This document shows positions 1 to 64,000 of a stretch of DNA of 64,000 bases, one piece after another. Each line of letters opens with the position of its first letter. Positions within the stretch are counted from its first letter, which is position 1. Origin of the DNA: Schmidtea nova (taxonomy: Eukaryota); assembly GCA_044892505.1 (NCBI GenBank), contig CM097884.1, forward strand, positions 160,828,001 through 160,892,000. Direction: 5' to 3'. The notes below the pieces were generated by a model. That model did not search any database. It was given only the letters and a program-made list of their open reading frames with translations, and had not been told where the DNA came from. The position numbers and the translations under genes were made by a program.

Positions 1-57
1 TCGAACCCGGGCCACCTGGGTGAGAGCCAGGAATCCTAACCGCTAGACCATCAGGGA
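1..57 (-). tRNA. trnE-CTC: tRNA-Glu(CTC), cut by window edge
   Basis: First 57 nt of the array tRNA. Confidence 0.9.
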
Positions 58-352
58 ATGATATATGTTTCCAATCTCTAGTTAAAGGTTTTCGAATTTC
101 GAAATTTACTTTTCCTCGACAAAATCAAACAACGCATGGCAAATGTTTGCCATTTTCAATCAAATGACAATCTCTTTCACAAATCTCATAGAATTTTGAT
201 TTTGTAAAATTATTAATAATTTTTTTTCAAATATTGGTAACGACCTTGGAACGTTTATATTAATCCAATTTGTTGAATTTGATTTTGAGTAGAGCAAATT
301 AGTTTCGACAAATTTACAACGTTTACAATCTTATCATGATGATAAGAAAGTG

Positions 353-359
353 AAAAAAA
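353..359 (-). terminator. RNA Pol III terminator T7 (representative; present 2 nt after each tRNA; T9 in three element-adjacent units)
   Basis: Minus strand reads ...TCAGGGAA-TA-TTTTTTT. Confidence 0.85.
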
Positions 360-361
360 TA

Positions 362-433
362 TTCCCTGACCGGGAGTCGAACCCGGGCCACCTGGGTGAG
401 AGCCAGGAATCCTAACCGCTAGACCATCAGGGA
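362..433 (-). tRNA. trnE-CTC: tRNA-Glu(CTC)
   Basis: Revcomp TCCCTGATGGTCTAGCGGTTAGGATTCCTGGCTCTCACCCAGGTGGCCCGGGTTCGACTCCCGGTCAGGGAA: acceptor TCCCTGA/TCAGGGA, anticodon stem CCTGG/CCAGG with loop CTCTCAC, GTTCGA B-box, no CCA. Confidence 0.97.
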
Positions 434-737
434 TCGATATATGTTTCCAATCTCTAGTTAAAGGTTTTCGAATTTCGAAATTTACTTTTCCTCGACAAAA
501 TCAAACAACGCATGGCAAATGTTTGCCATTTTCAATCAAATGACAATCTCTTTCACAAATCTCATAGAATTTTGATTTTGTAAAATTATTAATAATTTTT
601 TTTCAAATAATGGTAACGACCTTGGAACGTTTATATTAATCCAATTTGTTGAATTTGATTTTGAGTAGAGCAAATTAGTTTCGACAAATTTACAACGTTT
701 ACAATCTTATCATGATGATAAGAAAGTGAAAAAAATA

Positions 738-809
738 TTCCCTGACCGGGAGTCGAACCCGGGCCACCTGGGTGAGAGCCAGGAATCCTAACCGCTAGAC
801 CATCAGGGA
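738..809 (-). tRNA. trnE-CTC: tRNA-Glu(CTC)
   Basis: Same sequence as 362-433. Confidence 0.96.
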
Positions 810-1113
810 TCGATATATGTTTCCAATCTCTAGTTAAAGGTTTTCGAATTTCGAAATTTACTTTTCCTCGACAAAATCAAACAACGCATGGCAAATGTTT
901 GCCATTTTCAATCAAATGACAATCTCTTTCACAAATCTCATAGAATTTTGATTTTGTAAAATTATTAATAATTTTTTTTCAAATATTGGTAACGACCTTG
1001 GAACGTTTATATTAATCCAATTTGTTGAATTTGATTTTGAGTAGAGCAAATTAGTTTCGACAAATTTACAACGTTTACAATCTTATCATGATGATAAGAA
1101 AGTGAAAAAAATA

Positions 1114-1185
1114 TTCCCTGACCGGGAGTCGAACCCGGGCCACCTGGGTGAGAGCCAGGAATCCTAACCGCTAGACCATCAGGGA
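1114..1185 (-). tRNA. trnE-CTC: tRNA-Glu(CTC)
   Basis: Same as 362-433. Confidence 0.96.
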
Positions 1186-1489
1186 TCGATATATGTTTCC
1201 AATCTCTAGTTAAAGGTTTTCGAATTTCGAAATTTACTTTTCCTCGACAAAATCAAACAACGCATGGCAAATGTTTGCCATTTTCAATCAAATGACAATC
1301 TCTTTCACAAATCTCATAGAATTTTGATTTTGTAAAATTATTAATAATTTTTTTTCAAATAATGGTAACGACCTTGGAACGTTTATATTAATCCAATTTG
1401 TTGAATTTGATTTTGAGTAGAGCAAATTAGTTTCGACAAATTTACAACGTTTACAATCTTATCATGATGATAAGAAAGTGAAAAAAATA

Positions 1490-1561
1490 TTCCCTGACCG
1501 GGAGTCGAACCCGGGCCACCTGGGTGAGAGCCAGGAATCCTAACCGCTAGACCATCAGGGA
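1490..1561 (-). tRNA. trnE-CTC: tRNA-Glu(CTC)
   Basis: Same as 362-433. Confidence 0.96.
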
Positions 1562-1865
1562 TCGATATATGTTTCCAATCTCTAGTTAAAGGTTTTCGAA
1601 TTTCGAAATTTACTTTTCCTCGACAAAATCAAACAACGCATGGCAAATGTTTGCCATTTTCAATCAAATGACAATCTATTTCACAAATCTCATAGAATTT
1701 TGATTTTGTAAAATTATTAATAATTTTTTTTCAAATAATGGTAACGACCTTGGAACGTTTATATTAATCCAATTTGTTGAATTTGATTTTGAGTAGAGCA
1801 AATTAGTTTCGACAAATTTACAACGTTTACAATCTTATCATGATGATAAGAAAGTGAAAAAAATA

Positions 1866-1937
1866 TTCCCTGACCGGGAGTCGAACCCGGGCCACCTGGG
1901 TGAGAGCCAGGAATCCTAACCGCTAGACCATCAGGGA
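1866..1937 (-). tRNA. trnE-CTC: tRNA-Glu(CTC)
   Basis: Same as 362-433. Confidence 0.96.
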
Positions 1938-2241
1938 TCGATATATGTTTCCAATCTCTAGTTAAAGGTTTTCGAATTTCGAAATTTACTTTTCCTCGAC
2001 AAAATCAAACAACGCATGGCAAATGTTTGCCATTTTCAATCAAATGACAATCTCTTTCACAAATCTCATAGAATTTTGATTTTGTAAAATTATTAATAAT
2101 TTTTTTTCAAATAATGGTAACGACCTTGGAACGTTTATATTAATCCAATTTGTTGAATTTGATTTTGAGTAGAGCAAATTAGTTTCGACAAATTTACAAC
2201 GTTTACAATCTTATCATGATGATAAGAAAGTGAAAAAAATA

Positions 2242-2313
2242 TTCCCTGACCGGGAGTCGAACCCGGGCCACCTGGGTGAGAGCCAGGAATCCTAACCGCT
2301 AGACCATCAGGGA
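2242..2313 (-). tRNA. trnE-CTC: tRNA-Glu(CTC)
   Basis: Same as 362-433. Confidence 0.96.
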
Positions 2314-2617
2314 TCGATATATGTTTCCAATCTCTAGTTAAAGGTTTTCGAATTTCGAAATTTACTTTTCCTCGACAAAATCAAACAACGCATGGCAAAT
2401 GTTTGCCATTTTCAATCAAATGACAATCTCTTTCACAAATCTCATAGAATTTTGATTTTGTAAAATTATTAATAATTTTTTTTCAAATATTGGTAACGAC
2501 CTTGGAACGTTTATATTAATCCAATTTGTTGAATTTGATTTTGAGTAGAGCAAATTAGTTTCGACAAATTTACAACGTTTACAATCTTATCATGATGATA
2601 AGAAAGTGAAAAAAATA

Positions 2618-2689
2618 TTCCCTGACCGGGAGTCGAACCCGGGCCACCTGGGTGAGAGCCAGGAATCCTAACCGCTAGACCATCAGGGA
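2618..2689 (-). tRNA. trnE-CTC: tRNA-Glu(CTC)
   Basis: Same as 362-433. Confidence 0.96.
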
Positions 2690-2993
2690 TCGATATATGT
2701 TTCCAATCTCTAGTTAAAGGTTTTCGAATTTCGAAATTTACTTTTCCTCGACAAAATCAAACAACGCATGGCAAATGTTTGCCATTTTCAATCAAATGAC
2801 AATCTCTTTCACAAATCTCATAGAATTTTGATTTTGTAAAATTATTAATAATTTTTTTTCAAATAATGGTAACGACCTTGGAACGTTTATATTAATCCAA
2901 TTTGTTGAATTTGATTTTGAGTAGAGCAAATTAGTTTCGACAAATTTACAACGTTTACAATCTTATCATGATGATAAGAAAGTGAAAAAAATA

Positions 2994-3046
2994 TTCCCTG
3001 ACCGGGAGTCGAACCCGGGCCACCTGGGTGAGAGCCAGGAATCCTA
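2994..3046 (-). pseudogene. tRNA-Glu disrupted by element copy 1 (nt 20-72 remain)
   Basis: Plus strand ...aggaatccta|gtaaacg instead of ...aggaatccta|accgctag. Confidence 0.95.
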
Positions 3047-3577
3047 GTAAACGTTTATTAATTATAATAAATTTTTCAAATTTACAATGGGACAATGCTC
3101 TACATGGAGCATGCCTTTCATGAAAGATACAGCAAATAAAGAGACAGAATTTCAATGATAGTTAAAATCAAATGTGAGAAAATAAGGTCTCAATAAATGT
3201 TGCTTTTCATAAATGTTCCCTGGCGATGATTTGAAATATTTCATCGGACTGTTTTTCCGGCTTTGCGACATCCTTCAGCCTATCTTTTCATGTCATGATC
3301 ACAGTCTTTTTGTTTTCTGAGGAATCCGCAGCAATAAAACTTCTTCACGAGTCAAGGTGTCTAGAGACATTGAGTTTACAGACGCTAGAATTGGTTCTAC
3401 TAAATAAATATACAAATATACATATATACATATATAAATCCTCGGACTCGGGCGGAAATAAATCTAAAATAAATTTTATCTACAAATTAAAAAAAAAGGT
3501 TTATACTATATACATTAAAATGGCAATTCTCCGCACAACGAGTGTCTGCATTTTGATCGTGGCATTCATTACAAATC

Positions 3578-6500
3578 TCACAAGTCTCTAAGATAACCAG
3601 TCGTATGAAAATGCCACCTATTGGCTGAGTGTTTGATATTACTTATCGCACACTGTTTCAAAAGAGGATCGATTTTCTTCAAAGGTATTCCAACCTTTAA
3701 AAGAACATCGAAAGTCAAAGGTGGAATTGATCCTAGAGAACCAATGATACAAGTGAGTAGTTCTACCTTGTAATCAGGTTTCGCGATTTGAATTGCCTTT
3801 CTTAACGATTCGTATTTTAACAGGTTTTCTTTATTTACCTGCTCAAAACTCGAAAGACAATCAATCGGACATTTCATGTCTACCATGAGAATTCTTTTCC
3901 TATTTACGTCGGTGATGATGAGGTCAACTCGCTCTTTAGAGTATGGAACCAACGAACAAGTTTGATCGATAACGACAATAAGATTCGGATCTGTCAGTTG
4001 ATCTGTTATCAATTTCAAGCAATCATTGTGTCTTTTTGTTGCAAGTGTTTGATGAACTTTACATGATTGCAAAACATGTGCCATTGTTTCCTCCTCAGAG
4101 TGGCAGCGACGACAAAGTCTTTCTTTTACATTTCGATAAGGTTTAGCTAGAAATGACAATGTATTCGTGCGAGCACGATGGATGAAATTCCAAGAGAATT
4201 CTGACAGATCACTTCGAAAGATTGCTTTATTGATCTTAGGCGAAAGAGTGATTGCTGATGCGATCAAATTACTTTTATTACTACTTTGCCATTTGGAAAG
4301 ATAAGAATCAAAAAGCGTATCATGCAAGATCTTAGAAATAGAATTCCGAAAATCGGGAGTTGCGATCAATGTACCTCGCTCTTTTGTTGTAATATGAAGC
4401 ACAGGTTCATTATTTAGGGTTTGAAAGGATATTCTAATGGCATGAATTTTATTCAGGAATTCTACAGATGTTCGCGCTCTCCGAAAACGTGTTTTCTTTC
4501 CATGATGGATGCGCTTGCATTCAATGCCATTTAACCAATCAAAGCTATCCTGAAGAGTTGGATGCTGAATTCCAAGTCGAGAACTAGTGACAAATTTCAA
4601 AGAGTCTGTATTGATCTTTTTTGCATAATTGCAAATGGAAGTAAAAAGTCGAAAAAAGTGCACTATGGTTTGGACATGATATTCGTCAAGCAGGTCAACA
4701 CAAGAAGCTCCACCATTTTCCGTGGAGTTGTAAAAATATGAAATCTCTGAATTTTCAGGAAGATTCATCATTTTTCTCAAATGACTTCTTAATTTACTTG
4801 TGTTGTTACCAGTGACATTGCTATTTCCATAAGGGATTGCCAAAGTACTTGTTTTTATTTCCCTCGTTCTAAAAGGAAAGATGAGGCGTGAATGTAGAAA
4901 AATCTTGTAAGCTTTGAGTTTTTGCCAGCCTAACAAGTCAGAGTTTGCAAGTTTTTTGGCGTCAGATATTACCTTATTTAGGATATCATAAGGGCTTTGA
5001 TCAATATCTTCTCCAACTGGGACACCAAGATACTGATAGAACTCGCGAGATAGTAATTTCTTGATTTTGATATTTTCAATAGAAATTTCACTATCTATGT
5101 GGACCTTAGGAAGTTGAATGTATCCACATTTTTCTGGTCGATATACAAAACCTATTTGTGCAGCAGTGTCAACAGCTATATCAGTGATTCGTTGCAAGTC
5201 ACTGACATTTTTTGATATTAAAGCAATGTCGTCTGCGTATGCAAGAATTTGTAACGGAGATGTGCCAATCATGAATGGTTCTACTGTCGATCGGCTGACA
5301 GCTTCAAGTACCGGATTAATCGCAATGGCGAATAAAATCATTGAAATTGGGCATCCTTGTTTCACCCCTTGTCTAATAGCTATGTTTGAAGTGAGAACTG
5401 GTCCGCAACTGTACATAGAAGATGTGTCGGAATAAAGTAGTTGCAATATCGTAGTGAACTCATCACATACGCCAATATATCGAAGGACAGACCACATGTA
5501 TTCATGAGGGACACTACCAAATGCGTCTTTAATGTCAAGCCATGCAATCGATATTGGACAATCTTTACTATATTTAGAGTGTTCCAAAGCAGCTGTCAGT
5601 ATGGAATTGTGTTCAACACAGCCATCGTGTTCTGAACCTCCCTTTTGTCCAATGTGTAGAATGTTGTTCAAATCTACCCAAGTAGTAAGACGTCTAGCCA
5701 ATATCGAAGCAAAAACCTTATAAATCACTGACAATAAGGCAATCGGCCTCCAAGATGACACATTATCGTATTTGTCATTCTTGTCAGGTTTCGGAATCAA
5801 AAGAGTCCTGAAAGATTTCCAATCATTTGGAACGATTTTATCGGTTATTATTCGGTTAAAAAGAAATGCAAGGAGATCCCCATCGGGATCCAAAAGACGC
5901 AAATCTCTATATTGAATACCATCAGAACCAGGAGATGTGTTGTCAGCTTTTTTAAGCTCAAACAATACCTCGACTGGCAATATTCGATCGAGTTTCAAAG
6001 GCTTTTGTGATTTTTTACAGAATTGAAGGACAGAATTCCAGCATTTGGATATAGGTAATGCGTGACTATAATATTTAATAATGTCTTCAATTGAAGGCCT
6101 TACATTTATTTTAAAATTATCAATGATTTTACTGACGGCTCTTTTCATTTCCGTCATAAATAGAGAAATAATTTGAGTTTTATTTAATTTTGAGTTATCT
6201 CTCTTATTTTTCCCTAAATAAAGTTTAAAAGTTGATTTCTTACGATCAGGAAATTCTTTGATAATTATGTCAATGATCTCATTGACAGTTGAAAATTTAA
6301 TTGCTATTAAAAGGTCTTTGATTTTAATTTTGCGTTGAATTAAATTTAATTTAACTAGTTCCTTTTCATTCCCTTTTGGTATTATTTTAGTGTTAATTTT
6401 ATTTGTTTTATTGGCAACTGGAACTAAGGAACTAATAACATTTCCAATATCGCGCAGGTTGATGTTTTCAAGGGATATGTCACAAGCATAATGTTTGATA

Positions 6501-8158: not shown

Positions 8159-8167
8159 ACACCTTCA
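8099..8167 (-). promoter_or_regulatory. Putative UGA readthrough cassette (in-frame stop + downstream stem-loop), copy 1
   Basis: mRNA: UGA AGGUGUGUGC [CUGCAUCAGUC]-26 nt-[GACUGAUGCAG]; arms 8144-8154 and 8107-8117. Confidence 0.6.
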
Positions 8168-10909: not shown

Positions 10910-11270
10910 TAATATTTTAAAAAATTTATTAACCTTTTCAATATCTTTCTTATAAATTTATTATAATGAGTTATTTAAACAAATTTATATTAAAGGTTTT
11001 CAAATTTCGAAATTTACTTTTCCTCGACAAAATCAAACAACGCATGGCAAATGTTTGCCATTTTCAATCAAATGACAATCTCTTTCACAAATCTCATAGA
11101 ATTTTGATTTTGTAAAATTATTAATAATTTTTTTTCAAATAATGGTAACGACCTTGGAACGTTTATATTAATCCAATTTGTTGAATTTGATTTTGAGTAG
11201 AGCAAATTAGTTTCGACAAATTTACAACGTTTACAATCTTATCATGATGATAAGATTGTAAAAAAAAATA

Positions 11271-11342
11271 TTCCCTGACCGGGAGTCGAACCCGGGCCAC
11301 CTGGGTGAGAGCCAGGAATCCTAACCGCTAGACCATCAGGGA
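11271..11342 (-). tRNA. trnE-CTC: tRNA-Glu(CTC), variant T9 terminator
   Basis: Same as 362-433. Confidence 0.96.
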
Positions 11343-11646
11343 TCGATATATGTTTCCAATCTCTAGTTAAAGGTTTTCGAATTTCGAAATTTACTTTTCC
11401 TCGACAAAATCAAACAACGCATGGCAAATGTTTGCCATTTTCAATCAAATGATAATCTCTTTCACAAATCTCATAGAATTTTGATTTTGTAAAATTATTA
11501 ATAATTTTTTTTCAAATAATGGTAACGACCTTGGAACGTTTATATTAATCCAATTTGTTGAATTTGATTTTGAGTAGAGCAAATTAGTTTCGACAAATTT
11601 ACAACGTTTACAATCTTATCATGATGATAAGAAAGTGAAAAAAATA

Positions 11647-11718
11647 TTCCCTGACCGGGAGACAAACCCGGGCCACCTGGGTGAGAGCCAGGAATCCTAA
11701 CCGCTAGACCATCAGGGA
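11647..11718 (-). pseudogene. tRNA-Glu with mutated T-loop/B-box
   Basis: GGTTCGAC changed to GGTTTGTC (11662, 11664; C56T, A58T). Confidence 0.75.
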
Positions 11719-12022
11719 TCGATATATGTTTCCAATCTCTAGTTAAAGGTTTTCGAATTTCGAAATTTACTTTTCCTCGACAAAATCAAACAACGCATGG
11801 CAAATGTTTGCCATTTTCAATCAAATGACAATCTCTTTCACAAATCTCATAGAATTTTAATTTTGTAAAATTATTAATAATTTTTTTTCAAATAATGGTA
11901 ACGACCTTGGAACGTTTATATTAATCCAATTTGTTGAATTTGATTTTGAGTAGAGCAAATTAGTTTCGACAAATTTACAACGTTTACAATCTTATCATGA
12001 TGATAAGAAAGTGAAAAAAATA

Positions 12023-12094
12023 TTCCCTGACCGGGAGTCGAACCCGGGCCACCTGGGTGAGAGCCAGGAATCCTAACCGCTAGACCATCAGGGA
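12023..12094 (-). tRNA. trnE-CTC: tRNA-Glu(CTC)
   Basis: Same as 362-433. Confidence 0.96.
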
Positions 12095-12398: not shown

Positions 12399-12470
12399 TT
12401 CCCTGACCGGGAGTCGAACCCGGGCCACCTGGGTGAGAGCCAGGAATCCTAACCGCTAGACCATCAGGGA
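12399..12470 (-). tRNA. trnE-CTC: tRNA-Glu(CTC)
   Basis: Same as 362-433. Confidence 0.96.
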
Positions 12471-54813: not shown

Positions 54814-54822
54814 ACACCTTCA
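54754..54822 (-). promoter_or_regulatory. Putative UGA readthrough cassette, copy 4
   Basis: In-frame TGA; stem core 10 bp in this copy. Confidence 0.55.
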
Positions 54823-57579
54823 TTTATTTTTTTGTGTTACGCGCTTCGGTCTTTTAATAGTTTTGCGATGAATATTAATTATTTCCTCATTTGACGTAGC
54901 TGGACCTAAATCAATGTCAGTGGGAAGCAAGCGCTTAAGACTTTCTCTGTCTTTGTCTGATGTCAATAGAATGTTATCATCTATGTTAGGGGAAGGAGAT
55001 ATTTCTACAGATTCTTCATTAGAATCAACGACATTCTCAACAGTTTTCACACTATCAATTGTTGTATCGACATTTTCAGCAATCGTCTCAGAATTTACAT
55101 GTGGTAAAACATATTCAAGTAGTCTCGAGATGTGTACGCTCATACTAGGTGAACAAATTTTCCTACAATATTGAGGAACACGGAAACGTCTGTTGCCATT
55201 TAAGAAATATCTCTTATCTCTTACTACAAAAAACACGAGTCTCTTTGCTCTTAAAATCTCATCATCAGTTAGTTCAGATTCAAAATCATTGATCTTACTA
55301 GATATTATATTAAGCGCCTTGATTTGATCCGACTTATTTGGAAGAGACTTATCTACAAACTCTAAGAAAGCATTTAACTCAGAAATAGTTTTGGGAGAGA
55401 TTATGTTATGGATCTTGTCAATCTCTTGAGACAAATTAACCTGCTTTAGTTTCAGAAGTCTTTCCTGACAACTAGTTTTATAATAAGAACTACTGAGATT
55501 CTCGATCATTTCTGGGCCCCATATCTCAATCGTGTCAATGTCCAATGAGTACGAGTTTTCAATATCTGTTATGGAATGCATTAAAAAGCAATTCCTAAGA
55601 TAGTTTTGAACGTATATATCAAAACTCGGCTTAATAATTAATTTTAGGGAATCCCTTAATTTTAAATAATTTAGGTAAAAAATTATGTCAACCAGTTTTT
55701 GAGATGAAGTTGGTTGATCAAGAAGAGAACTAAACACATTGTCATCCTCTGACATCTGAACAAAGTTCAGTAGCCCTAAATTAAATATGATATCGGAGGC
55801 ACCATCTTCGTGCACAGCGACTGAATTTTCACTATAAATTTTAATAAATTTGCCCCCTGTAAATGAAATCTGTTCAGGGAATTTATTTTCAGATTTTAAT
55901 TTTTCTATTAAATTATTTAATGCGTGAGGATTAGCATATGTGTTTTCAATAAAACACAATTCCTCAATTTCTGGGTGTGATTTAAATAAATTTTGTAATT
56001 GCAACCTTGACAATTCAGATGCAGTTTGAGTTGAGAAAATTTCATCTGAATCGCAAGTGCTAAGAATATCGAGCATTACAAAATCTCCGTCTAGATATTT
56101 AATCTGTGATTTTATTAAAAAGTCAGGGAGCTCTTTTCGCTGTTTTAATTCGCGAAGAATATTATTAATTTGTATTTCCCTGGACTTTAAATTACTAATA
56201 GACACAGTGCCGGCCAGTTTCGACGAAAGGGAACAAAGAAAACGCTTAATAATTGAAGAAGCCGGGACAAATTTTGTATTTGTATTGTTGGCCTTCAAAA
56301 TGTTTGATCCAATCAAAAACGTCTTTGTAGAGGATTTTAAAATATTATTATTTAAAGGGACAACTTTATCAGGCACCAAATTCTGAAAAACACAGATATT
56401 ATGATTTCTATAAAAGAAACCTTCAAACCCAGCGATGCTTAGTGGATTTTCCTCTTTTATAATAATTAAAAGGTCATTGTTAATTAAATCAAATTTGTTG
56501 CTTGATTCTTTTAATTTCAAAAGTTTGTGAAATTTGGGAAATAATCTAAGAAAAGAATTTTTCTCCTTTTTTGTTAATATACGCGGTAAAATATTTTCAA
56601 AAATTTCTTTTTTTAATTTAAGATGAGAATTTTTATTTTTATTATTATTTCTGAAATTAGAATTTGATTTCATTTTCAAACTTTCCAATTTGAAATTTCG
56701 TTTATTTTGAAAGTTCTTATCAGTATTAAAATTATTTTTAGATTTAATTTCCTGATCATTTGATTTTAAATTAGAAATGTTATTTGCAGTTGAAATTTCG
56801 AAATTTTCAAAATTTCGATTGTTTAAATTATCCAATTTAATCGCAGGTAAATTAATATTTTCAAAAACAGGTTTAATAATTTTCTTTTTATTTTCATTAT
56901 TATTATTAATAGTTATATTATAATTTTCCAGCCAATTTCCATCGATTGCATAGCTTTCAGGAGTAGATCCATCATCTAGTAGAAGGATCTTTTCAAAATT
57001 ATTATTTTTATTAAAAAATAAATTTTTGTTATTTAGATTTTTGTTATTTAAAGTACTTTTTACATTATTATTATTATCTTTATAATCACTTAAATTTTGA
57101 CTATTCGGCTTTTCTAGTTGAATTGTTCGTTCGTTTTTAGTCTGTGTAGAATTATTTCTGTAAATTGTCGACTTATTTAATAAAATTTTATGACATGAAT
57201 AGCAAAGATTGCCTGCACTTTTGTCATTTTTATTTACATTCAAAGAGTTGTCATACAATTCGCTATTTTTATCTAAATTAGGAATTATTCTAAAATTTTC
57301 AATATTAGATTTACAATTAAAAGTAGATAAATTAGCATATAAATTACCACGACCAAAACCGGACACACCATTGTCAGAATTACCATTGTGAAAATTACAA
57401 TTATAATTTAAATTATCATTTAGATTTTTCGAACCAAAATTAGATATAGGTTTATTTACAAAATCTTGGTTCGAAACTTCCAAAAATTTAACAATATAAT
57501 CTAACTTACAGTTATTAGAATAAATCATCCTTTCAAGCTCTGACAAATTCGCCCCAAATGGCACAAAATTATCCTGCAT
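54820..57579 (-). CDS. ORF1, copy 4, 919 aa
   Basis: Intact; extra NNKNL repeat. Confidence 0.85.
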   Translation of the reverse strand: MQDNFVPFGANLSELERMIYSNNCKLDYIVKFLEVSNQDFVNKPISNFGSKNLNDNLNYNCNFHNGNSDNGVSGFGRGNLYANLSTFNCKSNIENFRIIPNLDKNSELYDNSLNVNKNDKSAGNLCYSCHKILLNKSTIYRNNSTQTKNERTIQLEKPNSQNLSDYKDNNNNVKSTLNNKNLNNKNLFFNKNNNFEKILLLDDGSTPESYAIDGNWLENYNITINNNNENKKKIIKPVFENINLPAIKLDNLNNRNFENFEISTANNISNLKSNDQEIKSKNNFNTDKNFQNKRNFKLESLKMKSNSNFRNNNKNKNSHLKLKKEIFENILPRILTKKEKNSFLRLFPKFHKLLKLKESSNKFDLINNDLLIIIKEENPLSIAGFEGFFYRNHNICVFQNLVPDKVVPLNNNILKSSTKTFLIGSNILKANNTNTKFVPASSIIKRFLCSLSSKLAGTVSISNLKSREIQINNILRELKQRKELPDFLIKSQIKYLDGDFVMLDILSTCDSDEIFSTQTASELSRLQLQNLFKSHPEIEELCFIENTYANPHALNNLIEKLKSENKFPEQISFTGGKFIKIYSENSVAVHEDGASDIIFNLGLLNFVQMSEDDNVFSSLLDQPTSSQKLVDIIFYLNYLKLRDSLKLIIKPSFDIYVQNYLRNCFLMHSITDIENSYSLDIDTIEIWGPEMIENLSSSYYKTSCQERLLKLKQVNLSQEIDKIHNIISPKTISELNAFLEFVDKSLPNKSDQIKALNIISSKINDFESELTDDEILRAKRLVFFVVRDKRYFLNGNRRFRVPQYCRKICSPSMSVHISRLLEYVLPHVNSETIAENVDTTIDSVKTVENVVDSNEESVEISPSPNIDDNILLTSDKDRESLKRLLPTDIDLGPATSNEEIINIHRKTIKRPKRVTQKNK

Positions 57580-57940
57580 TAATATTTTAAAAAATTTATT
57601 AACCTTTTCAATATCTTTCTTATAAATTTATTATAATGAGTTATTTAAACAAATTTATATTAAAGGTTTTCAAATTTCGAAATTTACTTTTCCTCGACAA
57701 AATCAAACAACGCATGGCAAATGTTTGCCATTTTCAATCAAATGACAATCTCTTTCACAAATCTCATAGAATTTTGATTTTGTAAAATTATTAATAATTT
57801 TTTTTCAAATAATGGTAACGACCTTGGAACGTTTATATTAATCCAATTTGTTGAATTTGATTTTGAGTAGAGCAAATTAGTTTCGACAAATTTACAACGT
57901 TTACAATCTTATCATGATGATAAGATTGTAAAAAAAAATA

Positions 57941-58012
57941 TTCCCTGACCGGGAGTCGAACCCGGGCCACCTGGGTGAGAGCCAGGAATCCTAACCGCTA
58001 GACCATCAGGGA
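57941..58012 (-). tRNA. trnE-CTC: tRNA-Glu(CTC), variant T9 terminator
   Basis: Same as 362-433. Confidence 0.96.
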
Positions 58013-58316
58013 TCGATATATGTTTCCAATCTCTAGTTAAAGGTTTTCGAATTTCGAAATTTACTTTTCCTCGACAAAATCAAACAACGCATGGCAAATG
58101 TTTGCCATTTTCAATCAAATGACAATCTCTTTCACAAATCTCATAGAATTTTGATTTTGTAAAATTATTAATAATTTTTTTTCAAATAATGGTAACGACC
58201 TTGGAACGTTTATATTAATCCAATTTGTTGAATTTGATTTTGAGTAGAGCAAATTAGTTTCGACAAATTTACAACGTTTACAATCTTATCATGATGATAA
58301 GAAAGTGAAAAAAATA

Positions 58317-58388
58317 TTCCCTGACCGGGAGTCGAACCCGGGCCACCTGGGTGAGAGCCAGGAATCCTAACCGCTAGACCATCAGGGA
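58317..58388 (-). tRNA. trnE-CTC: tRNA-Glu(CTC)
   Basis: Same as 362-433. Confidence 0.96.
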
Positions 58389-58692
58389 TCGATATATGTT
58401 TCCAATCTCTAGTTAAAGGTTTTCGAATTTCGAAATTTACTTTTCCTCGACAAAATCAAACAACGCATGGCAAATGTTTGCCATTTTCAATCAAATGACA
58501 ATCTCTTTCACAAATCTCATAGAATTTTGATTTTGTAAAATTATTAATAATTTTTTTTCAAATAATGGTAACGACCTTGGAACGTTTATATTAATCCAAT
58601 TTGTTGAATTTGATTTTGAGTAGAGCAAATTAGTTTCGACAAATTTACAACGTTTACAATCTTATCATGATGATAAGAAAGTGAAAAAAATA

Positions 58693-58764
58693 TTCCCTGA
58701 CCGGGAGTCGAACCCGGGCCACCTGGGTGAGAGCCAGGAATCCTAACCGCTAGACCATCAGGGA
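58693..58764 (-). tRNA. trnE-CTC: tRNA-Glu(CTC)
   Basis: Same as 362-433. Confidence 0.96.
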
Positions 58765-59068
58765 TCGATATATGTTTCCAATCTCTAGTTAAAGGTTTTC
58801 GAATTTCGAAATTTACTTTTCCTCGACAAAATCAAACAACGCATGGCAAATGTTTGCCATTTTCAATCAAATGACAATCTCTTTCACAAATCTCATAGAA
58901 TTTTGATTTTGTAAAATTATTAATAATTTTTTTTCAAATAATGGTAACGACCTTGGAACGTTTATATTAATCCAATTTGTTGAATTTGATTTTGAGTAGA
59001 GCAAATTTGTTTCGACAAATTTACAACGTTTACAATCTTATCATGATGATAAGAAAGTGAAAAAAATA

Positions 59069-59121
59069 TTCCCTGACCGGGAGTCGAACCCGGGCCACCT
59101 GGGTGAGAGCCAGGAATCCTA
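59069..59121 (-). pseudogene. tRNA-Glu disrupted by element copy 5
   Basis: aggaatccta|gtaaacg junction. Confidence 0.95.
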
Positions 59122-62100
59122 GTAAACGTTTATTAATTATAATAAATTTTCCAAATTTACAATGGGACAATGCTCTACATGGAGCATGCCTTTCATGAAA
59201 GATACAGCAAATAAAGAGACAGAATTTCAATGATAGTTAAAATCAAATGTGAGAAAATAAGGTCTCAATAAATGTTGCTTTTCATAAATGTTCCCTGGCG
59301 ATGATTTGAAATATTTCATCGGACTGTTTTTCCGGCTTTGCGGCATCCTTCAGCCTATCTTTTCATGTCATGATCACAGTCTTTTTGTTTTCTGAGGAAT
59401 CCGCAGCAATAAAACTTCTTCACGAGTCAAGGTGTCTAGAGACATTGAGTTTACAGACGCTAGAATTGGTTCTACTAAATAAATATACAAATATACATAT
59501 ATACATATATAAATCCTCGGACTCGGGCGGAAATAAATCTAAAATAAATTTTATCTACAAATTAAAAAAAAAGGTTTATACTATATACATTAAAATGGCA
59601 ATTCTCCGCACAACGAGTGTCTGCATTTTGATCGTGGCATTCATTACAAATCTCACAAGTCTCTAAGATAACCAGTCGTATGAAAATGCCACCTATTGGC
59701 TGAGTGTTTGATATTACTTATCGCACACTGTTTCAAAAGAGGATCGATTTTCTTCAAAGGTATTCCAACCTTTAAAAGAACATCGAAAGTCAAAGGTGGA
59801 ATTGATCCTAGAGAACCAATGATACAAGTGAGTAGTTCTACCTTGTAATCAGGTTTCGCGATTTGAATTGCCTTTCTTAACGATTCGTATTTTAACAGGT
59901 TTTCTTTATTTACCTGCTCAAAACTCGAAAGACAATCAATCGGACATTTCATGTCTACCATGAGAATTCTTTTCCTATTTACGTCGGTGATGATGAGGTC
60001 AACTCGCTCTTTAGAGTATGGAACCAACGAACAAGTTTGATCGATAACGACAATAAGATTCGGATCTGTCAGTTGATCTGTTATCAATTTCAAACAATCA
60101 TTGTGTCTTTTTGTTGCAAGTGTTTGATGAACTTTACATGATTGCAAAACATGTGCCATTGTTTCCTCCTCAGAGTGGCAGCGACGACAAAGTCTTTCTT
60201 TTACATTTCGATAAGGTTTAGCTAGAAATGACAATGTATTCGTGCGAGCACGATGGATGAAATTCCAAGAGAATTCTGACAGATCACTTCGAAAGATTGC
60301 TTTATTGATCTTAGGCGAAAGAGTGATTGCTGATGCGATCAAATTACTTTTATTACTACTTTGCCATTTGGAAAGATAAGAATCAAAAAGCGTATCATGC
60401 AAGATCTTAGAAATAGAATTCCGAAAATCGGGAGTTGCGATCAATGTACCTCGCTCTTTTGTTGTAATATGAAGCACAGGTTCATTATTTAGGGTTTGAA
60501 AGGATATCCTAATGGCATGAATTTTATTCAGGAATTCTACAGATGTTCGCGCTCTCCGAAAACGTGTTTTCTTTCCATGATGGATGCGCTTGCATTCAAT
60601 GCCATTTAACCAATCAAAGCTATCCTGAAGAGTTGGATGCTGAATTCCAAGTCGAGAACTAGTGACAAATTTCAAAGAGTCTGTATTGATCTTTTTTGCA
60701 TAATTGCAAATGGAAGTAAAAAGTCGAAAAAAGTGCACTATGGTTTGGACATGATATTCGTCAAGCAGGTCAACACAAGAAGCTCCACCATTTTCCGTGG
60801 AGTTGTAAAAATATGAAATCTCTGAATTTTCAGGAAGATTCATCATTTTTCTCAAATGACTTCTCAATTTACTTGTGTTGTTACCAGTGACATTGCTATT
60901 TCCATAAGGGATTGCCAAAGTACTTGTTTTTATTTCCCTCGTTCTAAAAGGAAAGATGAGGCGTGAATGTAGAAAAATCTTGTAAGCTTTGAGTTTTTGC
61001 CAGCCTAACAAGTCAGAGTTTGCAAGTTTTTTGGCGTCAGATATTACCTTATTTAGGATATCATAAGGGCTTTGATCAATATCTTCTCCAACTGGGACAC
61101 CAAGATACTGATAGAACTCGCGAGATAGCAATTTCTTGATTTTGATATTTTCAATAGAAATTTCACTATCTATGTGGACCTTAGGAAGTTGAATGTATCC
61201 ACATTTTTCTGGTCGATATACAAAACCTATTTGTGCAGCAGTGTCAACAGCTATATCAGTGATTCGTTGCAAGTCACTGACATTTTTTGATATTAAAGCA
61301 ATGTCGTCTGCGTATGCAAGAATTTGTAACGGAGATGTGCCAATCATGAATGGTTCTACTGTCGATCGGCTGACAGCTTCAAGTACCGGATTAATCGCAA
61401 TGGCGAATAAAATCATTGAAATTGGGCATCCTTGTTTCACCCCTTGTCTAATAGCTATGTTTGAAGTGAGAACTGGTCCGCAACTGTACATAGAAGATGT
61501 GTCGGAATAAAGTAGTTGCAATATCGTAGTGAACTCATCACATACGCCAATATATCGAAGGACAGACCACATGTATTCATGAGGGACACTACCAAATGCG
61601 TCTTTAATGTCAAGCCATGCAATCGATATTGGACAATCTTTACTATATTTAGAGTGTTCCAAAGCAGCTGTCAGTATGGAATTGTGTTCAACACAGCCAT
61701 CGTGTTCTGAACCTCCCTTTTGTCCAATGTGTAGAATGTTGTTCAAATCTACCCAAGTAGTAAGACGTCTAGCCAGTATCGAAGCAAAAACCTTATAAAT
61801 CACTGACAATAAGGCAATCGGCCTCCAAGATGACACATTATCGTATTTGTCATTCTTGTCAGGTTTCGGAATCAAAAGAGTCCTGAAAGATTTCCAATCA
61901 TTTGGAACGATTTTATCGGTTATTATTCGGTTAAAAAGAAATGCAAGGAGATCCCCATCGGGATCCAAAAGACGCAAATCTCTATATTGAATACCATCAG
62001 AACCAGGAGATGTGTTGTCAGCTTTTTTAAGCTCAAACAATACCTCGACTGGCAATATTCGATCGAGTTTCAAAGGCTTTTGTGATTTTTTACAGAATTG

Positions 62101-64000
62101 AAGGACAGAATTCCAGCATTTGGATATAGGTAATGCGTGACTATAATATTTAATAATGTCTTCAATTGAAGGCCTTACATTTATTTTAAAATTATCAATG
62201 ATTTTACTGACGGCTCTTTTCATTTCCGTCATAAATAGAGAAATAATTTGAGTTTTATTTAATTTTGAGTTATCTCTCTTATTTTTCCCTAAATAAAGTT
62301 TAAAAGTTGATTTCTTACGATCAGGAAATTCTTTGATAATTATGTCAATGATCTCATTGACAGTTGAAAATTTAATTGCTATTAAAAGGTCTTTGATTTT
62401 AATTTTGCGTTGAATTAAATTTAATTTAACTAGTTCCTTTTCATTCCCTTTTGGTATTATTTTAGTGTTAATTTTATTTGTTTTATTGGCAACTGGAACT
62501 AAGGAACTAATAACATTTCCAATATCGCGCAGGTTGATGTTTTCAAGGGATATGTCACAAGCATAATGTTTGATAAATGCGCATATAAGTATTTTACAGA
62601 GAAGACCTGAACCTCGCACATCATGTGGACAAATACCGTTTGTCAATGCACGACCAGGGGTTTCTCGTAATTCATTAATTTTTTCAATGATGGTTTTACT
62701 CATTGAGAGATAATTAATACCGGATAAAAGAGTTGTTGGATTCAAAATATAATGTGCATCGGTATTGTAATCTATTATTAATAAGTTTTCCCTTGATTTT
62801 TGGGGGGTTATAACTGAAAAAATGACTTGTGCTTTAACAAGACATTCATAATTTAGAAATGTACTGATGTATTGGGTACAATCATCGAGGATCGCCGTTG
62901 ACATTGTTGCGTTTAACAAGATAAAGGTCGGTGATAATTTTAGATTGTTAAAATAAGTTGTTAGAATTTGATCGTCAAGCTTCCCATTTATTGTGTCTAA
63001 GTTTAAACAGATTTCATTTACATGTTTTAGTTTCAATGATTTTAGTGATTTTGTAGTATCTTCAAGATTGGCAATGTTATTAAAAATTAACTTTTCTAAT
63101 AAAGTAATGAAATATGATGCCATTATGATTGGTTCAACGGAAAATATTGGTGAGAAACTGATCTCGTGATCAATGATAAAGTTAATCTTTCTCTGAAGGA
63201 AAAATTGATTCAAATAATCGGTCATATTTTCTCCTATACCGATTAATCTTTCTTTTACAGTTTGAAAGCCTGTAGTAAAAATGTGACTTTTTCCGAGTTG
63301 AACAGAGAACAGAAATAAGCACCAAGAGTTGTTATTTGGAATAATACTTATTACATGTTCAATGTATTGAAATTGTTTGAAAGTCACGTTTTCAATAATG
63401 AAAGCATTATTTTGCGCAACTATATTTGACGTTAATTCGGGAGAGAGAACCATTATATTAGTGTAGGTTGAAAACCATTTATCAATCAATGTTGATATGC
63501 ATGGGTTTTCGTTATATAGCATGATGTTATTTGCTTTGCTTTTATATCTAACTGCTTTCTTGAAGTTGATCAAGTTCATAAAGTTTGACTTTGGCGGACC
63601 ACCTCCAATTGTTTTTGATGTAATAGTGGTACAGTTAGCATTATTATTGAAAACATCTTCCCTTATACTATTTACAAAATTATCAGGAAAGTATTCCCAA
63701 ACTTGACTAATTATCAATGCGTAAGCGCAGACAAAAGGCCCACAATCAAAGTCGTTATTTTGATATTCAAGTTTTATATGGGGATTATATGTTACCGCCG
63801 CTTTAAGTTTAAACAATTTGTTTAAAGCCATATTTATTTTAAGGGCGCTCGTTTTGTTGATAAATTTATTTTTATTTTCAAGAATTGGATCAATGTAGTA
63901 CGAAAGTAAGGATGATTTACAGTACACGAACAAGATCCAATGTGCGTTTGATATATTTAATGGGCAAAGTATTATTTGCGCGTTAAACACCGTTTCTGGA
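59122..64000 (-). mobile_element. tRNA-Glu-targeting RLE retrotransposon, copy 5 (5' part outside window)
   Basis: Same 3' junction and 3' UTR; ORF2 runs to the window edge. Confidence 0.95.
59653..64000 (-). CDS. ORF2, copy 5, N-terminus cut by window edge
   Basis: Matches residues about 79-1526 of copy 1, intact. Confidence 0.93.
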   Translation of the reverse strand, partial: PETVFNAQIILCPLNISNAHWILFVYCKSSLLSYYIDPILENKNKFINKTSALKINMALNKLFKLKAAVTYNPHIKLEYQNNDFDCGPFVCAYALIISQVWEYFPDNFVNSIREDVFNNNANCTTITSKTIGGGPPKSNFMNLINFKKAVRYKSKANNIMLYNENPCISTLIDKWFSTYTNIMVLSPELTSNIVAQNNAFIIENVTFKQFQYIEHVISIIPNNNSWCLFLFSVQLGKSHIFTTGFQTVKERLIGIGENMTDYLNQFFLQRKINFIIDHEISFSPIFSVEPIIMASYFITLLEKLIFNNIANLEDTTKSLKSLKLKHVNEICLNLDTINGKLDDQILTTYFNNLKLSPTFILLNATMSTAILDDCTQYISTFLNYECLVKAQVIFSVITPQKSRENLLIIDYNTDAHYILNPTTLLSGINYLSMSKTIIEKINELRETPGRALTNGICPHDVRGSGLLCKILICAFIKHYACDISLENINLRDIGNVISSLVPVANKTNKINTKIIPKGNEKELVKLNLIQRKIKIKDLLIAIKFSTVNEIIDIIIKEFPDRKKSTFKLYLGKNKRDNSKLNKTQIISLFMTEMKRAVSKIIDNFKINVRPSIEDIIKYYSHALPISKCWNSVLQFCKKSQKPLKLDRILPVEVLFELKKADNTSPGSDGIQYRDLRLLDPDGDLLAFLFNRIITDKIVPNDWKSFRTLLIPKPDKNDKYDNVSSWRPIALLSVIYKVFASILARRLTTWVDLNNILHIGQKGGSEHDGCVEHNSILTAALEHSKYSKDCPISIAWLDIKDAFGSVPHEYMWSVLRYIGVCDEFTTILQLLYSDTSSMYSCGPVLTSNIAIRQGVKQGCPISMILFAIAINPVLEAVSRSTVEPFMIGTSPLQILAYADDIALISKNVSDLQRITDIAVDTAAQIGFVYRPEKCGYIQLPKVHIDSEISIENIKIKKLLSREFYQYLGVPVGEDIDQSPYDILNKVISDAKKLANSDLLGWQKLKAYKIFLHSRLIFPFRTREIKTSTLAIPYGNSNVTGNNTSKLRSHLRKMMNLPENSEISYFYNSTENGGASCVDLLDEYHVQTIVHFFRLFTSICNYAKKINTDSLKFVTSSRLGIQHPTLQDSFDWLNGIECKRIHHGKKTRFRRARTSVEFLNKIHAIRISFQTLNNEPVLHITTKERGTLIATPDFRNSISKILHDTLFDSYLSKWQSSNKSNLIASAITLSPKINKAIFRSDLSEFSWNFIHRARTNTLSFLAKPYRNVKERLCRRCHSEEETMAHVLQSCKVHQTLATKRHNDCLKLITDQLTDPNLIVVIDQTCSLVPYSKERVDLIITDVNRKRILMVDMKCPIDCLSSFEQVNKENLLKYESLRKAIQIAKPDYKVELLTCIIGSLGSIPPLTFDVLLKVGIPLKKIDPLLKQCAISNIKHSANRWHFHTTGYLRDL

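What the first reader, a model, noticed from the sequence alone, without database searches (positions are those of the whole stretch)
1..64000. Retrotransposon that lives inside a tRNA-Glu(CTC) tandem array and inserts at one fixed base of the tRNA
Seen: five copies, all in tRNA sense orientation, all joined at their 3' end to tRNA nt 20 (element ...AAACGTTTAC|TAGGATTCC, copy 2 |TTGGATTCC; junctions 3046/7, 18843/4, 32396/7, 49698/9, 59121/2). This splits the D-loop/A-box and kills the gene, with 20, 14, 24 and 3 full-length genes between copies. Established: RLE non-LTR elements (R2 in 28S rDNA, NeSL-1 in the SL1 leader, R5 in planarian 28S, Utopia in U2 snRNA) are site-specific for multicopy RNA genes, and NeSL-type elements carry a Ulp1 domain. 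Inference: this is an R2/rDNA-like niche built on a satellite-like tRNA array. From memory only, tRNA-targeting NeSL-group families exist in Repbase (planarian LIN_SM series, Ciona YURE), so the family may be partly known.
Basis: partly seen in the sequence, partly recalled or inferred. Interest (0 to 1): 0.85.

Follow-up and report, generated by a model that had tools for sequence, protein, structure and literature searches.

The report
tRNA-Glu gene-specific retrotransposon in tRNA array
A young, apparently still active jumping gene of the R2/NeSL type sits five times in a tandem array of tRNA-Glu genes, always cutting the gene at the same base; tRNA-gene-specific relatives were reported in planarians in 2015, so this is a very clean new example, not a new kind of element.

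Summary
The window holds 68 intact tRNA-Glu(CTC) genes in a 376-bp tandem repeat. Five ~7.95-kb insertions, 99.6-99.8% identical, lie in tRNA sense, each joined at its 3' end to tRNA nt 20.

The element has no LTRs. ORF1 (914-919 aa, no known fold) is followed by one in-frame TGA, then ORF2 (1526 aa): three Ulp1-like folds (only the first keeps the catalytic residues), reverse transcriptase, a CCHC finger and a restriction-like endonuclease.

Independent insertion, not passive array duplication, is supported:
- Differences between copies in ORF2 are 17 synonymous to 6 nonsynonymous (p=1e-7).
- The 3' flanks carry four array haplotypes.
- A 30%-identical relative from a metagenome ends in the D-loop of a tRNA-Phe gene.

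All four full copies lack the same 43 nt of target and share private variants in the upstream spacer. This suggests the RNA carries an upstream spacer leader that guides 5' joining, as in some R2 elements.

Kojima & Jurka (2015) already reported tRNA-Glu-, tRNA-Arg- and tRNA-Pro-specific NeSL-related families. The tail they show for the tRNA-Glu family matches this element at 21 of 23 bases. Verdict: new member of a known kind.

The parts
1..3046 (-). tRNA-Glu(CTC) array block 1. It holds 7 intact genes, one gene cut by the window start, and at 2994-3046 the remnant (nt 20-72) of the gene hit by copy 1.
3047..10989 (-). Element copy 1, full length (7943 bp), both ORFs open.
3047..3577 (-). 3' UTR of copy 1 (531 nt). 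It ends ...AATAAACGTTTAC with no poly(A) tail. The last 23 bases but one match the tail shown for the planarian tRNA-Glu family at 21 of 23.
   Evidence: The fold is no more stable than shuffles.
3578..8164 (-). ORF2 of copy 1 (1526 aa counted from the GTG at 8158). It has no ATG before the protease domain and is in frame with ORF1.
3680..4132 (-). CCHC zinc knuckle plus restriction-like endonuclease (ORF2 aa 1343-1493).
   Evidence: Aligned to the RLE of solved R2 proteins 9nl2 and 9nl3, with the D..D.K residues kept.
4700..6166 (-). Reverse transcriptase with flanking fingers/thumb region (ORF2 aa 665-1153; YADD motif present).
6479..6898 (-). Ulp1-like fold 3 (ORF2 aa ~421-560). The catalytic Cys is lost.
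7004..7426 (-). Ulp1-like fold 2 (ORF2 aa ~245-385), degenerate.
7559..8050 (-). Ulp1/C48 protease domain 1 (ORF2 aa ~37-200). The His, Asp and Q..DCG motifs are invariant in relatives.
8099..8161 (-). Hairpin with an 11-bp stem starting 13 nt after the ORF1 stop codon. Candidate read-through stimulator.
   Evidence: z = -3.9; 1 of 200 shuffles as stable
8165..10909 (-). ORF1 of copy 1 (914 aa, stop TGA at 8165-8167). The N-terminal third is Asn-rich and low in complexity. The rest is a family-specific protein with no known fold.
10910..10989 (-). Unique 5' leader of copy 1 (80 nt). A TATAAAT motif lies at the junction with the array.
10990..11261 (-). Spacer segment upstream of copy 1. It carries the variants found only next to elements (unit position 340 C>T, and a palindrome-perfecting change after the T-run). 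Proposed co-mobilised leader.
10990..18843 (-). Array block 2: 20 intact genes, plus at 18791-18843 the remnant of the gene hit by copy 2 (a variant unit haplotype).
18844..26801 (-). Element copy 2, full length (7958 bp). ORF1 is at 23962-26721 (919 aa) and ORF2 at 19375-23955; both are open.
26802..32396 (-). Array block 3: 14 intact genes, plus the remnant at 32344-32396. The unit next to copy 2 carries only the 340 C>T variant.
32397..40340 (-). Element copy 3, full length (7944 bp). ORF1 (37516-40260) is open.
32928..37509 (-). ORF2 of copy 3. It is broken by one frameshift; no other break was seen.
40341..49698 (-). Array block 4: 24 intact genes, plus the remnant at 49646-49698. It includes an intact variant unit at 43254-43325 with the same haplotype as the 3' flank of copy 2.
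49699..57659 (-). Element copy 4, full length (7961 bp). ORF1 is at 54820-57579 (919 aa) and ORF2 at 50233-54813; both are open.
57660..59121 (-). Array block 5: 3 intact genes, plus the remnant at 59069-59121.
59122..64000 (-). Element copy 5, the 3' 4879 bp, cut by the window end. ORF2 is open as far as it can be read.

Best explanation
This is a recently active, sequence-specific non-LTR retrotransposon of the restriction-like-endonuclease (RLE) type. It belongs to a lineage related to NeSL and to the planarian R5/LIN elements. Its chosen target is the D-loop of tRNA-Glu(CTC) genes in a tandem array.

Shown here:
- The domain content: RT, a CCHC finger and an RLE, with a Ulp1 protease upstream.
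- A fixed 3' junction between tRNA nt 19 and 20, always in tRNA sense orientation.
- The interrupted gene is dead: nt 1-19 are missing, and with them most of the D-arm region, where the internal promoter's A box lies (established tRNA biology).
- The copies are near-identical and differ mostly at synonymous sites.

Inferred mechanism:
1. ORF1 and ORF2 are translated as one polyprotein by reading through a conserved in-frame TGA. A hairpin just downstream probably helps.
2. The first Ulp1 domain cuts the polyprotein.
3. ORF2 binds the 3' UTR of its own RNA.
4. The RLE nicks the antisense strand of the tRNA gene opposite nt 19/20.
5. The freed 3' OH primes reverse transcription exactly at the last base of the element. 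Hence there is no poly(A) tail and no copied flank.
6. The RNA begins in the array spacer upstream of the element. The new cDNA therefore ends in spacer sequence and anneals to the spacer upstream of the target gene.
7. This gives every insertion the same 5' junction, the same 43-nt target loss and the same private spacer variants. It parallels R2 elements whose RNA keeps upstream 28S sequence.
8. The multicopy array absorbs the damage: 5 of about 74 units are hit in this window.
For: Anatomy:
- RVT_1 (E=2e-26) and Peptidase_C48 domains in ORF2.
- RT and CCHC+RLE align to solved R2 proteins 9nl2, 9nl3 and 9dou (E down to 4e-45).
- No LTR or TIR.
- The Ulp1 fold is confirmed by an AlphaFold model and Foldseek (NEDP1, SENP, Ulp1; E~1e-5).

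Site:
- Five of five 3' junctions at nt 19/20 in one orientation.
- No 5' tRNA halves are left in the window.

Independent, selected copies:
- ORF2 differences are 17 synonymous to 6 nonsynonymous, against 21% synonymous expected (binomial p=1e-7).
- Most variants are singletons.
- The 3' flanks carry four ordinary array haplotypes. Copy 2's flank also occurs as an intact unit at 43254-43325.
- Spacing is irregular: 20, 14, 24 and 3 units.

Family-level targeting:
- L004, 30% identical in ORF2, sits in the same 100%-bootstrap clade.
- It ends ...TTATTATC followed directly by a tRNA-Phe(GAA) gene from D-loop nt ~18 to its T-run, in the same orientation.
- Literature: LIN25_SM, LIN15_SM and NeSL-1_TV are tRNA-gene-specific (PMC4640811).
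- The tail in that paper's S6 Fig hits the ends of all five copies at 21 of 23 bases and nowhere else (0.01 matches expected).

Read-through:
- A single TGA lies between two ORFs in one frame.
- The protease domain begins before the first ATG of ORF2.
- Eleven relatives at 33-51% full-length identity start at the same residue just after a stop.
- L004 also has ORF1-TGA-ORF2 in one frame.
- The hairpin after the TGA has z=-3.9.

Leader:
- Unit position 340 C>T occurs in 4 of 4 element-adjacent upstream units and in 0 of 73 other units.
- A palindrome-perfecting variant 272 nt upstream of the junction occurs in 3 of 4 and in 0 of 73.
- The 3' flanks show no such linkage.
- The R2 precedent for uniform 5' junctions through retained upstream target sequence is PMC3774820.
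Against: - Only one window of one genome was seen, so a genome-wide census of flanks was not possible.
- The identical 5' junction, the shared upstream variants and the absence of 5'-truncated copies are also what DNA-level duplication within the array would give.
- The start of the transcript is unknown, and no promoter or ribozyme was found (Rfam E<=1 scan).
- Read-through is inferred from sequence alone. The hairpin is absent in the distant relative L004.
- Covariation in the hairpin could not be tested because the relatives' DNA was out of reach.
- The 3' UTR shows no exceptional folding (z=0.23).
- L004 is a single copy, so its tRNA-Phe junction could in principle be chance.
- Clade naming rests on architecture, target and a 23-nt tail, not on a phylogeny with named NeSL, R5 or LIN sequences.
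Confidence: 0.8

Rival explanations
1. There was one old insertion. It was then multiplied inside the array by unequal crossing-over, segmental duplication or gene conversion. The five copies would then say nothing about present-day site specificity.
For: - The 5' junction and the 43-nt target loss are identical in all four full copies.
- Private spacer variants are shared upstream of the copies.
- All copies are full length.
- The mosaic of unit variants shows that the array recombines.
- A few variant patterns between copies conflict with one another, which hints at exchange between copies.
Against: - Copy differences in ORF2 are strongly biased to synonymous sites (17 to 6, p=1e-7). Neutral decay of passive duplicates would not produce this.
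- Sharing is one-sided. The upstream flank is private to elements, while the 3' flanks, starting one base from the junction, carry four ordinary array haplotypes.
- Spacing is irregular, with no higher-order repeat.
- A distant relative and published families also sit in tRNA genes.
- Some contribution of recombination to copy number is not excluded.
Confidence: 0.12
2. Targeting comes from tethering to the RNA polymerase III transcription complex or to tRNA-gene chromatin, as with Ty3, TRE5-A or DGLT-A. It would not come from a sequence-specific endonuclease.
For: - The targets are Pol III genes.
- The insertion site lies at the end of the D-arm region, where the A box sits.
- No recognisable zinc-finger or Myb DNA-binding domain is found in ORF2.
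Against: - The junction is at one exact phosphodiester inside the gene in 5 of 5 copies. Pol III-tethered elements instead insert at a distance outside the gene (e.g. TRE5-A upstream of tRNA genes; abstract of PMC5391098).
- An apparently intact RLE with its catalytic residues is present.
- Relatives hit different tRNAs at family-specific positions.
Confidence: 0.04
3. The pattern is an assembly artefact: a repeat-rich region was mis-joined so that one element appears several times.
For: Tandem arrays with near-identical 8-kb inserts are hard to assemble.
Against: - Each copy has its own private substitutions and indels.
- Each copy has its own flanking unit haplotypes.
- The window contains no N.
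Confidence: 0.02

Closest known systems
LIN25_SM (Schmidtea mediterranea; Repbase; Kojima & Jurka 2015, PMC4640811)
   Same: - It is reported as tRNA-Glu-gene-specific and as part of the R5/LIN lineage of the NeSL clade.
- Its 3' tail in S6 Fig matches the last bases of this element at 21 of 23.
   Different: - The one tRNA-flanked copy shown there joins tRNA-Glu(TTC) near nt 5. Three other copies shown have unrelated flanks.
- Here the target is tRNA-Glu(CTC) at nt 19/20, in 5 of 5 copies, inside a tandem array.
- Protein or full-length identity could not be measured because Repbase is not available.
LIN15_SM (tRNA-Arg genes) and NeSL-1_TV (tRNA-Pro genes)
   Same: They are RLE elements of the NeSL-related group that insert inside tRNA genes at family-specific positions.
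   Different: They use other tRNAs and other positions within the gene. Their array context and coding structure are not described in the paper.
R2 (28S rDNA)
   Same: - The RT-CCHC-RLE core is the best match among solved structures.
- The niche is a tandem multicopy RNA gene.
- The 3' junction is exact and has no poly(A) tail.
- The uniform 5' junction can be explained by upstream target sequence kept on the RNA (PMC3774820).
   Different: - This element has two ORFs joined by a stop codon, where R2 has one ORF.
- It has Ulp1-like domains where R2 has N-terminal zinc-finger and Myb domains.
- No HDV-like ribozyme was found.
- A Pol III gene array cannot supply a long co-transcript.
- In the NJ tree it lies apart from Myb-bearing R2-like proteins.
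NeSL-1 (nematode spliced-leader genes)
   Same: - A Ulp1-like cysteine protease lies upstream of RT, with the RLE downstream.
- The target is a small multicopy RNA gene (PMC4640811).
- Caenorhabditis proteins with C48+RT architecture are among the named relatives.
   Different: - Identity is about 25-27% in RT-RLE.
- They form a separate branch in the NJ tree.
- Here the protease fold is triplicated, and ORF1 is set off by a stop codon.
Other tRNA-gene-specific mobile elements: Dada DNA transposons (PMC3706591, PMC8869645) and the APE-type element Dewa in tRNA arrays of zebrafish (Kojima & Fujiwara 2004, cited from memory and from the reference list of PMC4640811)
   Same: They use the same survival strategy of living inside multicopy small RNA genes.
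   Different: Their enzymes are unrelated: a DDE transposase or an AP-like endonuclease. No such domain is present here.

Membership tests
Non-LTR retrotransposons with a restriction-like endonuclease (R2, R4, NeSL, CRE, HERO) | Reverse transcriptase of the non-LTR type with the YADD motif | tested here: met
   RVT_1 E=2e-26. The best solved relatives are R2 and then L1 ORF2 proteins.
Non-LTR retrotransposons with a restriction-like endonuclease (R2, R4, NeSL, CRE, HERO) | CCHC finger plus PD-(D/E)xK endonuclease C-terminal to the RT; no AP endonuclease | tested here: met
   ORF2 aa 1343-1493 align to the RLE of 9nl2 and 9nl3 with the catalytic residues kept. No PF03372 hit.
Non-LTR retrotransposons with a restriction-like endonuclease (R2, R4, NeSL, CRE, HERO) | No terminal repeats | tested here: met
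   No LTR or TIR in copy 1.
NeSL clade (sensu Kojima & Jurka 2015, including R5/LIN and Utopia) | RT phylogeny groups it with NeSL-1, R5, LIN or Utopia reference sequences | not testable with these tools
   - No Repbase sequences are available.
- An NJ tree with database proteins puts it in a 100%-supported unnamed clade.
- That clade's link to Caenorhabditis C48+RT proteins is unresolved.
NeSL clade (sensu Kojima & Jurka 2015, including R5/LIN and Utopia) | Ulp1-like cysteine protease upstream of the RT (present in NeSL-1 and Utopia-1_TSP, but not in all members) | tested here: met
NeSL clade (sensu Kojima & Jurka 2015, including R5/LIN and Utopia) | Target-specific insertion into a multicopy small RNA gene | tested here: met
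   Five of five junctions at tRNA-Glu nt 19/20. Independence of the copies is supported.
LIN25_SM family | Sequence identity to the Repbase entry | tested here: inconclusive
   Only the 23-nt tail printed in the paper could be compared. It matches at 21 of 23, at the ends of all copies and nowhere else.
LIN25_SM family | Same target gene and position | tested here: not met
   The published junction is tRNA-Glu(TTC) near nt 5. Here it is tRNA-Glu(CTC) at nt 19/20.
R2 clade proper | Single ORF with N-terminal zinc-finger/Myb domains, a 28S rDNA target and a 5' HDV-like ribozyme | tested here: not met
   There are two ORFs, no ZF or Myb domain, a tRNA target and no ribozyme hit.
Pol III-complex-directed retrotransposons (Ty3, TRE5/TRE3, DGLT-A) | Insertion outside the tRNA gene at a set distance; no sequence-specific endonuclease | tested here: not met
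   Insertion is inside the gene at one base, and an RLE is present.

The most novel reading that the evidence does not exclude
The element may combine three features not described together for RLE retrotransposons.
- It may carry at least 270 nt of the host array's own spacer as its 5' leader. It would use that leader for homology-guided 5' joining, and possibly for transcription. That would be a ribozyme-free counterpart of the R2 trick and an answer to how such an element is expressed inside a Pol III gene array.
- It may make ORF1-ORF2 by programmed TGA read-through, with a triplicated Ulp1 module to process the product.
- It would belong to a wider, so far unnamed clade that targets the D-loops of different tRNA genes (Glu here, Phe in L004).
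Probability: 0.35. Interest if true: 0.6.

Novelty: new member of a known kind. Interest (0 to 1): 0.45.

Why it matters
- Site-specific RLE retrotransposons are the model for how a mobile element can live harmlessly in a multicopy gene. R2 in rDNA is almost the only case studied in depth.
- tRNA-gene-specific relatives have so far been documented by one sentence and one supplementary figure.
- This window gives a complete natural picture of such a system. It shows the array, about 7% of units occupied, intact young copies, exact junctions on both sides, evidence of selection on the enzyme and the coding strategy.
- It poses clear descriptive questions: where the transcript starts in a Pol III array, whether a stop codon is read through, and what the extra Ulp1-like folds and ORF1 do.
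- It also shows that a whole clade of unnamed relatives exists in environmental assemblies.

Tried and rejected
Negative or uninformative results:
- HDV-like or any other ribozyme or RNA family at the element ends: nothing beyond tRNA at E<=1.
- Special folding of the 3' UTR: not above shuffles.
- ORF1 identity: no Pfam hit, no PDB sequence hit, no word-based homologs and no significant similarity to ORF1 of L004. A full HMMER scan found 12 homologs. The AlphaFold model (pLDDT 77) has no PDB fold match. ORF1 stays unassigned.
- Relatives in IMG/VR: none.
- Relatives in prokaryotic genomes: only remote RTs in three MAG contigs.
- Other JGI loci (L005-L039) lack 3' ends or are too distant, and none has a tRNA.
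- Host identity: not settled. The Hydractinia paper reports tRNA tandem arrays in hydroids, but its supplements gave no match. The tail similarity points to a flatworm.

Tools or sources that were not available:
The contigs of the close relatives P0001-P0011 and other genomic copies could therefore not be read.
- The NeSL-1 paper (PMC1460889) is not held.

Full report
**Observation**

The window is a tandem array of a 376-bp unit. Each unit has a 72-nt tRNA-Glu(CTC) gene on the - strand, followed three bases later by a T-run. There are 68 intact genes plus one cut by the window start.

Read on the - strand, each ends ...AAACGTTTAC and is followed by tRNA nt 20-72. The gene counts between copies (20, 14, 24, 3) are right. 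The four complete copies are 7943-7961 bp, and the fifth is cut by the window end. Pairwise identity is 99.64-99.82%. The window has no N.

**Anatomy**

The element has no terminal repeats and no poly(A) tail. From 5' to 3' on the - strand (copy 1 coordinates) it contains:
- An 80-nt unique leader.
- ORF1, 914 aa (919 aa in copies 2 and 4 because of an in-frame 15-nt tandem duplication).
- A single TGA.
- ORF2, 1526 aa, in the same frame.
- A 531-nt 3' UTR.

ORF2 carries a Peptidase_C48/Ulp1 domain, RVT_1 and a weak zf-RVT match. Against solved structures the best matches are R2 proteins (9nl2, 9nl3, 9dou; E down to 4e-45). One aligned block covers the RT. A second covers the CCHC finger and the restriction-like endonuclease, with its acidic and lysine residues in place.

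An AlphaFold model of ORF2 aa 1-700 (pLDDT 72) shows the same helix/three-strand/helix pattern three times, at about aa 37-200, 245-385 and 421-560. Further support for three Ulp1-like folds:
- Foldseek returns NEDP1, SENP and Ulp1 proteases.
- Profile comparison links the three segments (E = 1.6e-4, 1e-3 and 8e-6).
- Only the first keeps the His, Asp and Q..DCG residues, which are invariant in relatives.
- In relative P0013 the Pfam-detectable protease sits at the third position instead.

ORF1 has no Pfam, PDB-sequence or PDB-fold match. Only 12 homologs were found among 1.8 billion representatives.

State of the copies: both ORFs are open in copies 1, 2 and 4. ORF2 of copy 5 is open as far as the window goes. 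ORF2 of copy 3 has one frameshift and no other break. The places are not repeated here.

**The stop codon**

Several facts argue that ORF1 and ORF2 are translated together:
- The Ulp1 domain begins before the first ATG of ORF2.
- Eleven relatives (33-51% identical over the full ORF2; 40-59% over RT-RLE) all begin at the same residue, immediately after a stop.
- The distant relative L004 also has ORF1-TGA-ORF2 in one frame, and its similarity to ORF2 begins right after the stop.
- Thirteen nt after the TGA an 11-bp-stem hairpin begins (z = -3.9; 1 of 200 shuffles as stable).
- The two arms of that hairpin encode the only conserved residues in an otherwise variable stretch of the relatives.

I infer programmed read-through giving an ORF1-ORF2 polyprotein that the protease then cuts. 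This is inference. Reinitiation or non-AUG initiation are alternatives.

**Junctions and independence of the copies**

The 5' junction is the same in all four full copies. The array stops 24 nt before the tRNA start, so 43 nt of target are gone. That alone would fit one insertion multiplied by unequal crossing-over. Four observations argue otherwise.

- *Selection.* Among the differences between copies, ORF2 has 17 synonymous and 6 nonsynonymous changes, where 21% synonymous is expected (p = 1e-7). ORF1 has 4 and 4. Passive duplicates decaying in place would not show this. Copies drawn from a replicating lineage under selection would.
- *One-sided flank sharing.* The partial units just 3' of the five copies carry four haplotypes, and all four occur elsewhere in the array. 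Copy 2's haplotype (A21T, G42A, spacer 222A) is also found as an intact unit at 43254-43325. In contrast, the units just 5' of the copies carry variants found nowhere else. Unit position 340 C>T occurs in 4 of 4 against 0 of 73 (about 7e-7 by exact test, my arithmetic). A multi-base change that perfects a palindrome just after the upstream tRNA's T-run occurs in 3 of 4 against 0 of 73. The second unit upstream differs in all four.
- *Spacing.* It is irregular, and variants are mostly private to one copy.
- *Family behaviour.* L004 (JGI contig Ga0209893_1000189) falls in the same 100%-bootstrap clade in an NJ tree of RT-RLE. It ends ...TTATTATC joined directly to a tRNA gene fragment running from D-loop nt ~18 to the 3' end and T-run, in the same orientation. 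Its anticodon loop reads GAA, i.e. Phe.

**Mechanism**

The fixed 3' junction without a tail or copied flank is what target-primed reverse transcription gives when the protein positions the RNA's 3' end. This is established for R2. The nick must lie in the antisense strand opposite nt 19/20.

The one-sided linkage of upstream spacer variants is best explained if the RNA starts in the spacer upstream of the element. It would start at least 272 nt upstream in the lineage of copies 1, 3 and 4. The cDNA would then end in spacer sequence and pair with the spacer upstream of the new target. The exchange point would be invisible, and further downstream in copy 2. The 43-nt loss would be inherited with the leader.

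Eickbush et al. (PMC3774820) proposed the same logic for R2 elements whose RNA keeps up to 36 nt of upstream 28S sequence and whose 5' junctions are uniform. No ribozyme was found here, and a Pol III array cannot supply an 8-kb co-transcript. The promoter therefore remains unknown. A fixed second-strand cut 43 nt upstream could explain the uniform loss, but not the linked variants.

**Comparison with what is known**

Kojima & Jurka 2015 (PMC4640811) state the following:
- NeSL-1_TV is tRNA-Pro-specific.
- The planarian LIN15_SM is tRNA-Arg-specific and LIN25_SM is tRNA-Glu-specific.
- R5/LIN forms a lineage (96% bootstrap) within their NeSL clade, in which target specificity has diversified.
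- NeSL-1 and Utopia-1_TSP carry an N-terminal Ulp1-like protease.

Their S6 Fig shows one copy joined to tRNA-Glu(TTC) near nt 5 and three copies with other flanks. A 23-nt piece of that tail finds the ends of all five copies here with 2 mismatches, and nothing else in the window (0.01 matches expected).

The element is therefore most likely a relative of LIN25_SM, with a different isoacceptor and a different cut position. The host is likely, but not shown to be, a flatworm. The window is 33% G+C.

Named database relatives are only 25-31% identical. They include Caenorhabditis proteins with C48+RT architecture, and scorpion, Plectus, rotifer and sponge proteins. A phylogeny with named NeSL, R5 or LIN references could not be made.

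**Verdict**

Novelty is that of a new, unusually well-preserved member of a known kind. Three leads appear undescribed, judging by my reading of one paper and by literature searches that found only that paper naming LIN25_SM or LIN15_SM:
- the co-mobilised spacer leader;
- the conserved TGA with its hairpin;
- the triple Ulp1-like module.

Other genomic copies and the contigs of close relatives were not seen.
- Copies were compared as they stand, and scripts printed only counts.
- The hhalign result files left in /scratch contain consensus lines the tool writes by itself. They were neither printed nor used.
- The output necessarily shows the two ORF pieces of copy 3. They are not repeated in notes or report.

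Noticed in passing
window ~11240-11270, ~40590-40620 and ~57910-57940 (- strand): The array unit just upstream of copies 1, 3 and 4 has a multi-base variant after the tRNA's T-run. It turns an imperfect palindrome into a perfect 15-bp-stem hairpin. It looks like one quasi-palindrome correction event. It is absent upstream of copy 2 and from all other units.
   Followed up: partly
window 8099-8161 (- strand), and the same place in the other copies: A strong hairpin starts 13 nt after the ORF1 TGA. Its arms coincide with the only conserved residues at the start of ORF2 in relatives. It is not present in the distant relative L004.
   Followed up: partly
window 26164-26192 and 57022-57050: An in-frame 15-nt tandem duplication in ORF1 of copies 2 and 4 gives 919 instead of 914 aa. 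This grouping of copies conflicts with the grouping by the upstream palindrome variant.
   Followed up: partly
window 43254-43325, 11647-11718, and near 27530: Variant array units:
- A tRNA with A21T and G42A, the same haplotype as the 3' flank of copy 2.
- A tRNA with two T-loop changes and a lower Rfam score (55.1 against 61.6 bits).
- One 374-bp unit.
   Followed up: partly
window 9920-10909 (- strand): The first ~330 aa of ORF1 are Asn-rich and low in complexity. They are not conserved in the ORF1 homologs, which align from about aa 210-420 onward.
   Followed up: no
window 5118-5435 (+), 9402-9731 (+), and the same places in the other copies: Antisense ORFs of 105 and 109 aa occur in every copy. 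They are probably chance in AT-rich sequence.
   Followed up: no
L004:6400-6560: The 3' UTR of the tRNA-Phe-associated relative contains a tandem repeat of about 65 nt. Its ORF1 ends in C2H2-like motifs, and its ORF2 has only one, degenerate Ulp1-like domain.
   Followed up: partly
P0001-P0019, P0073-P0081 (protein hits): A sizeable set of unnamed relatives (30-59% identical in RT-RLE), many with RT+C48, exists only on short contigs of ENA metagenome and Logan assemblies. Their hosts and targets are unknown.
   Followed up: partly
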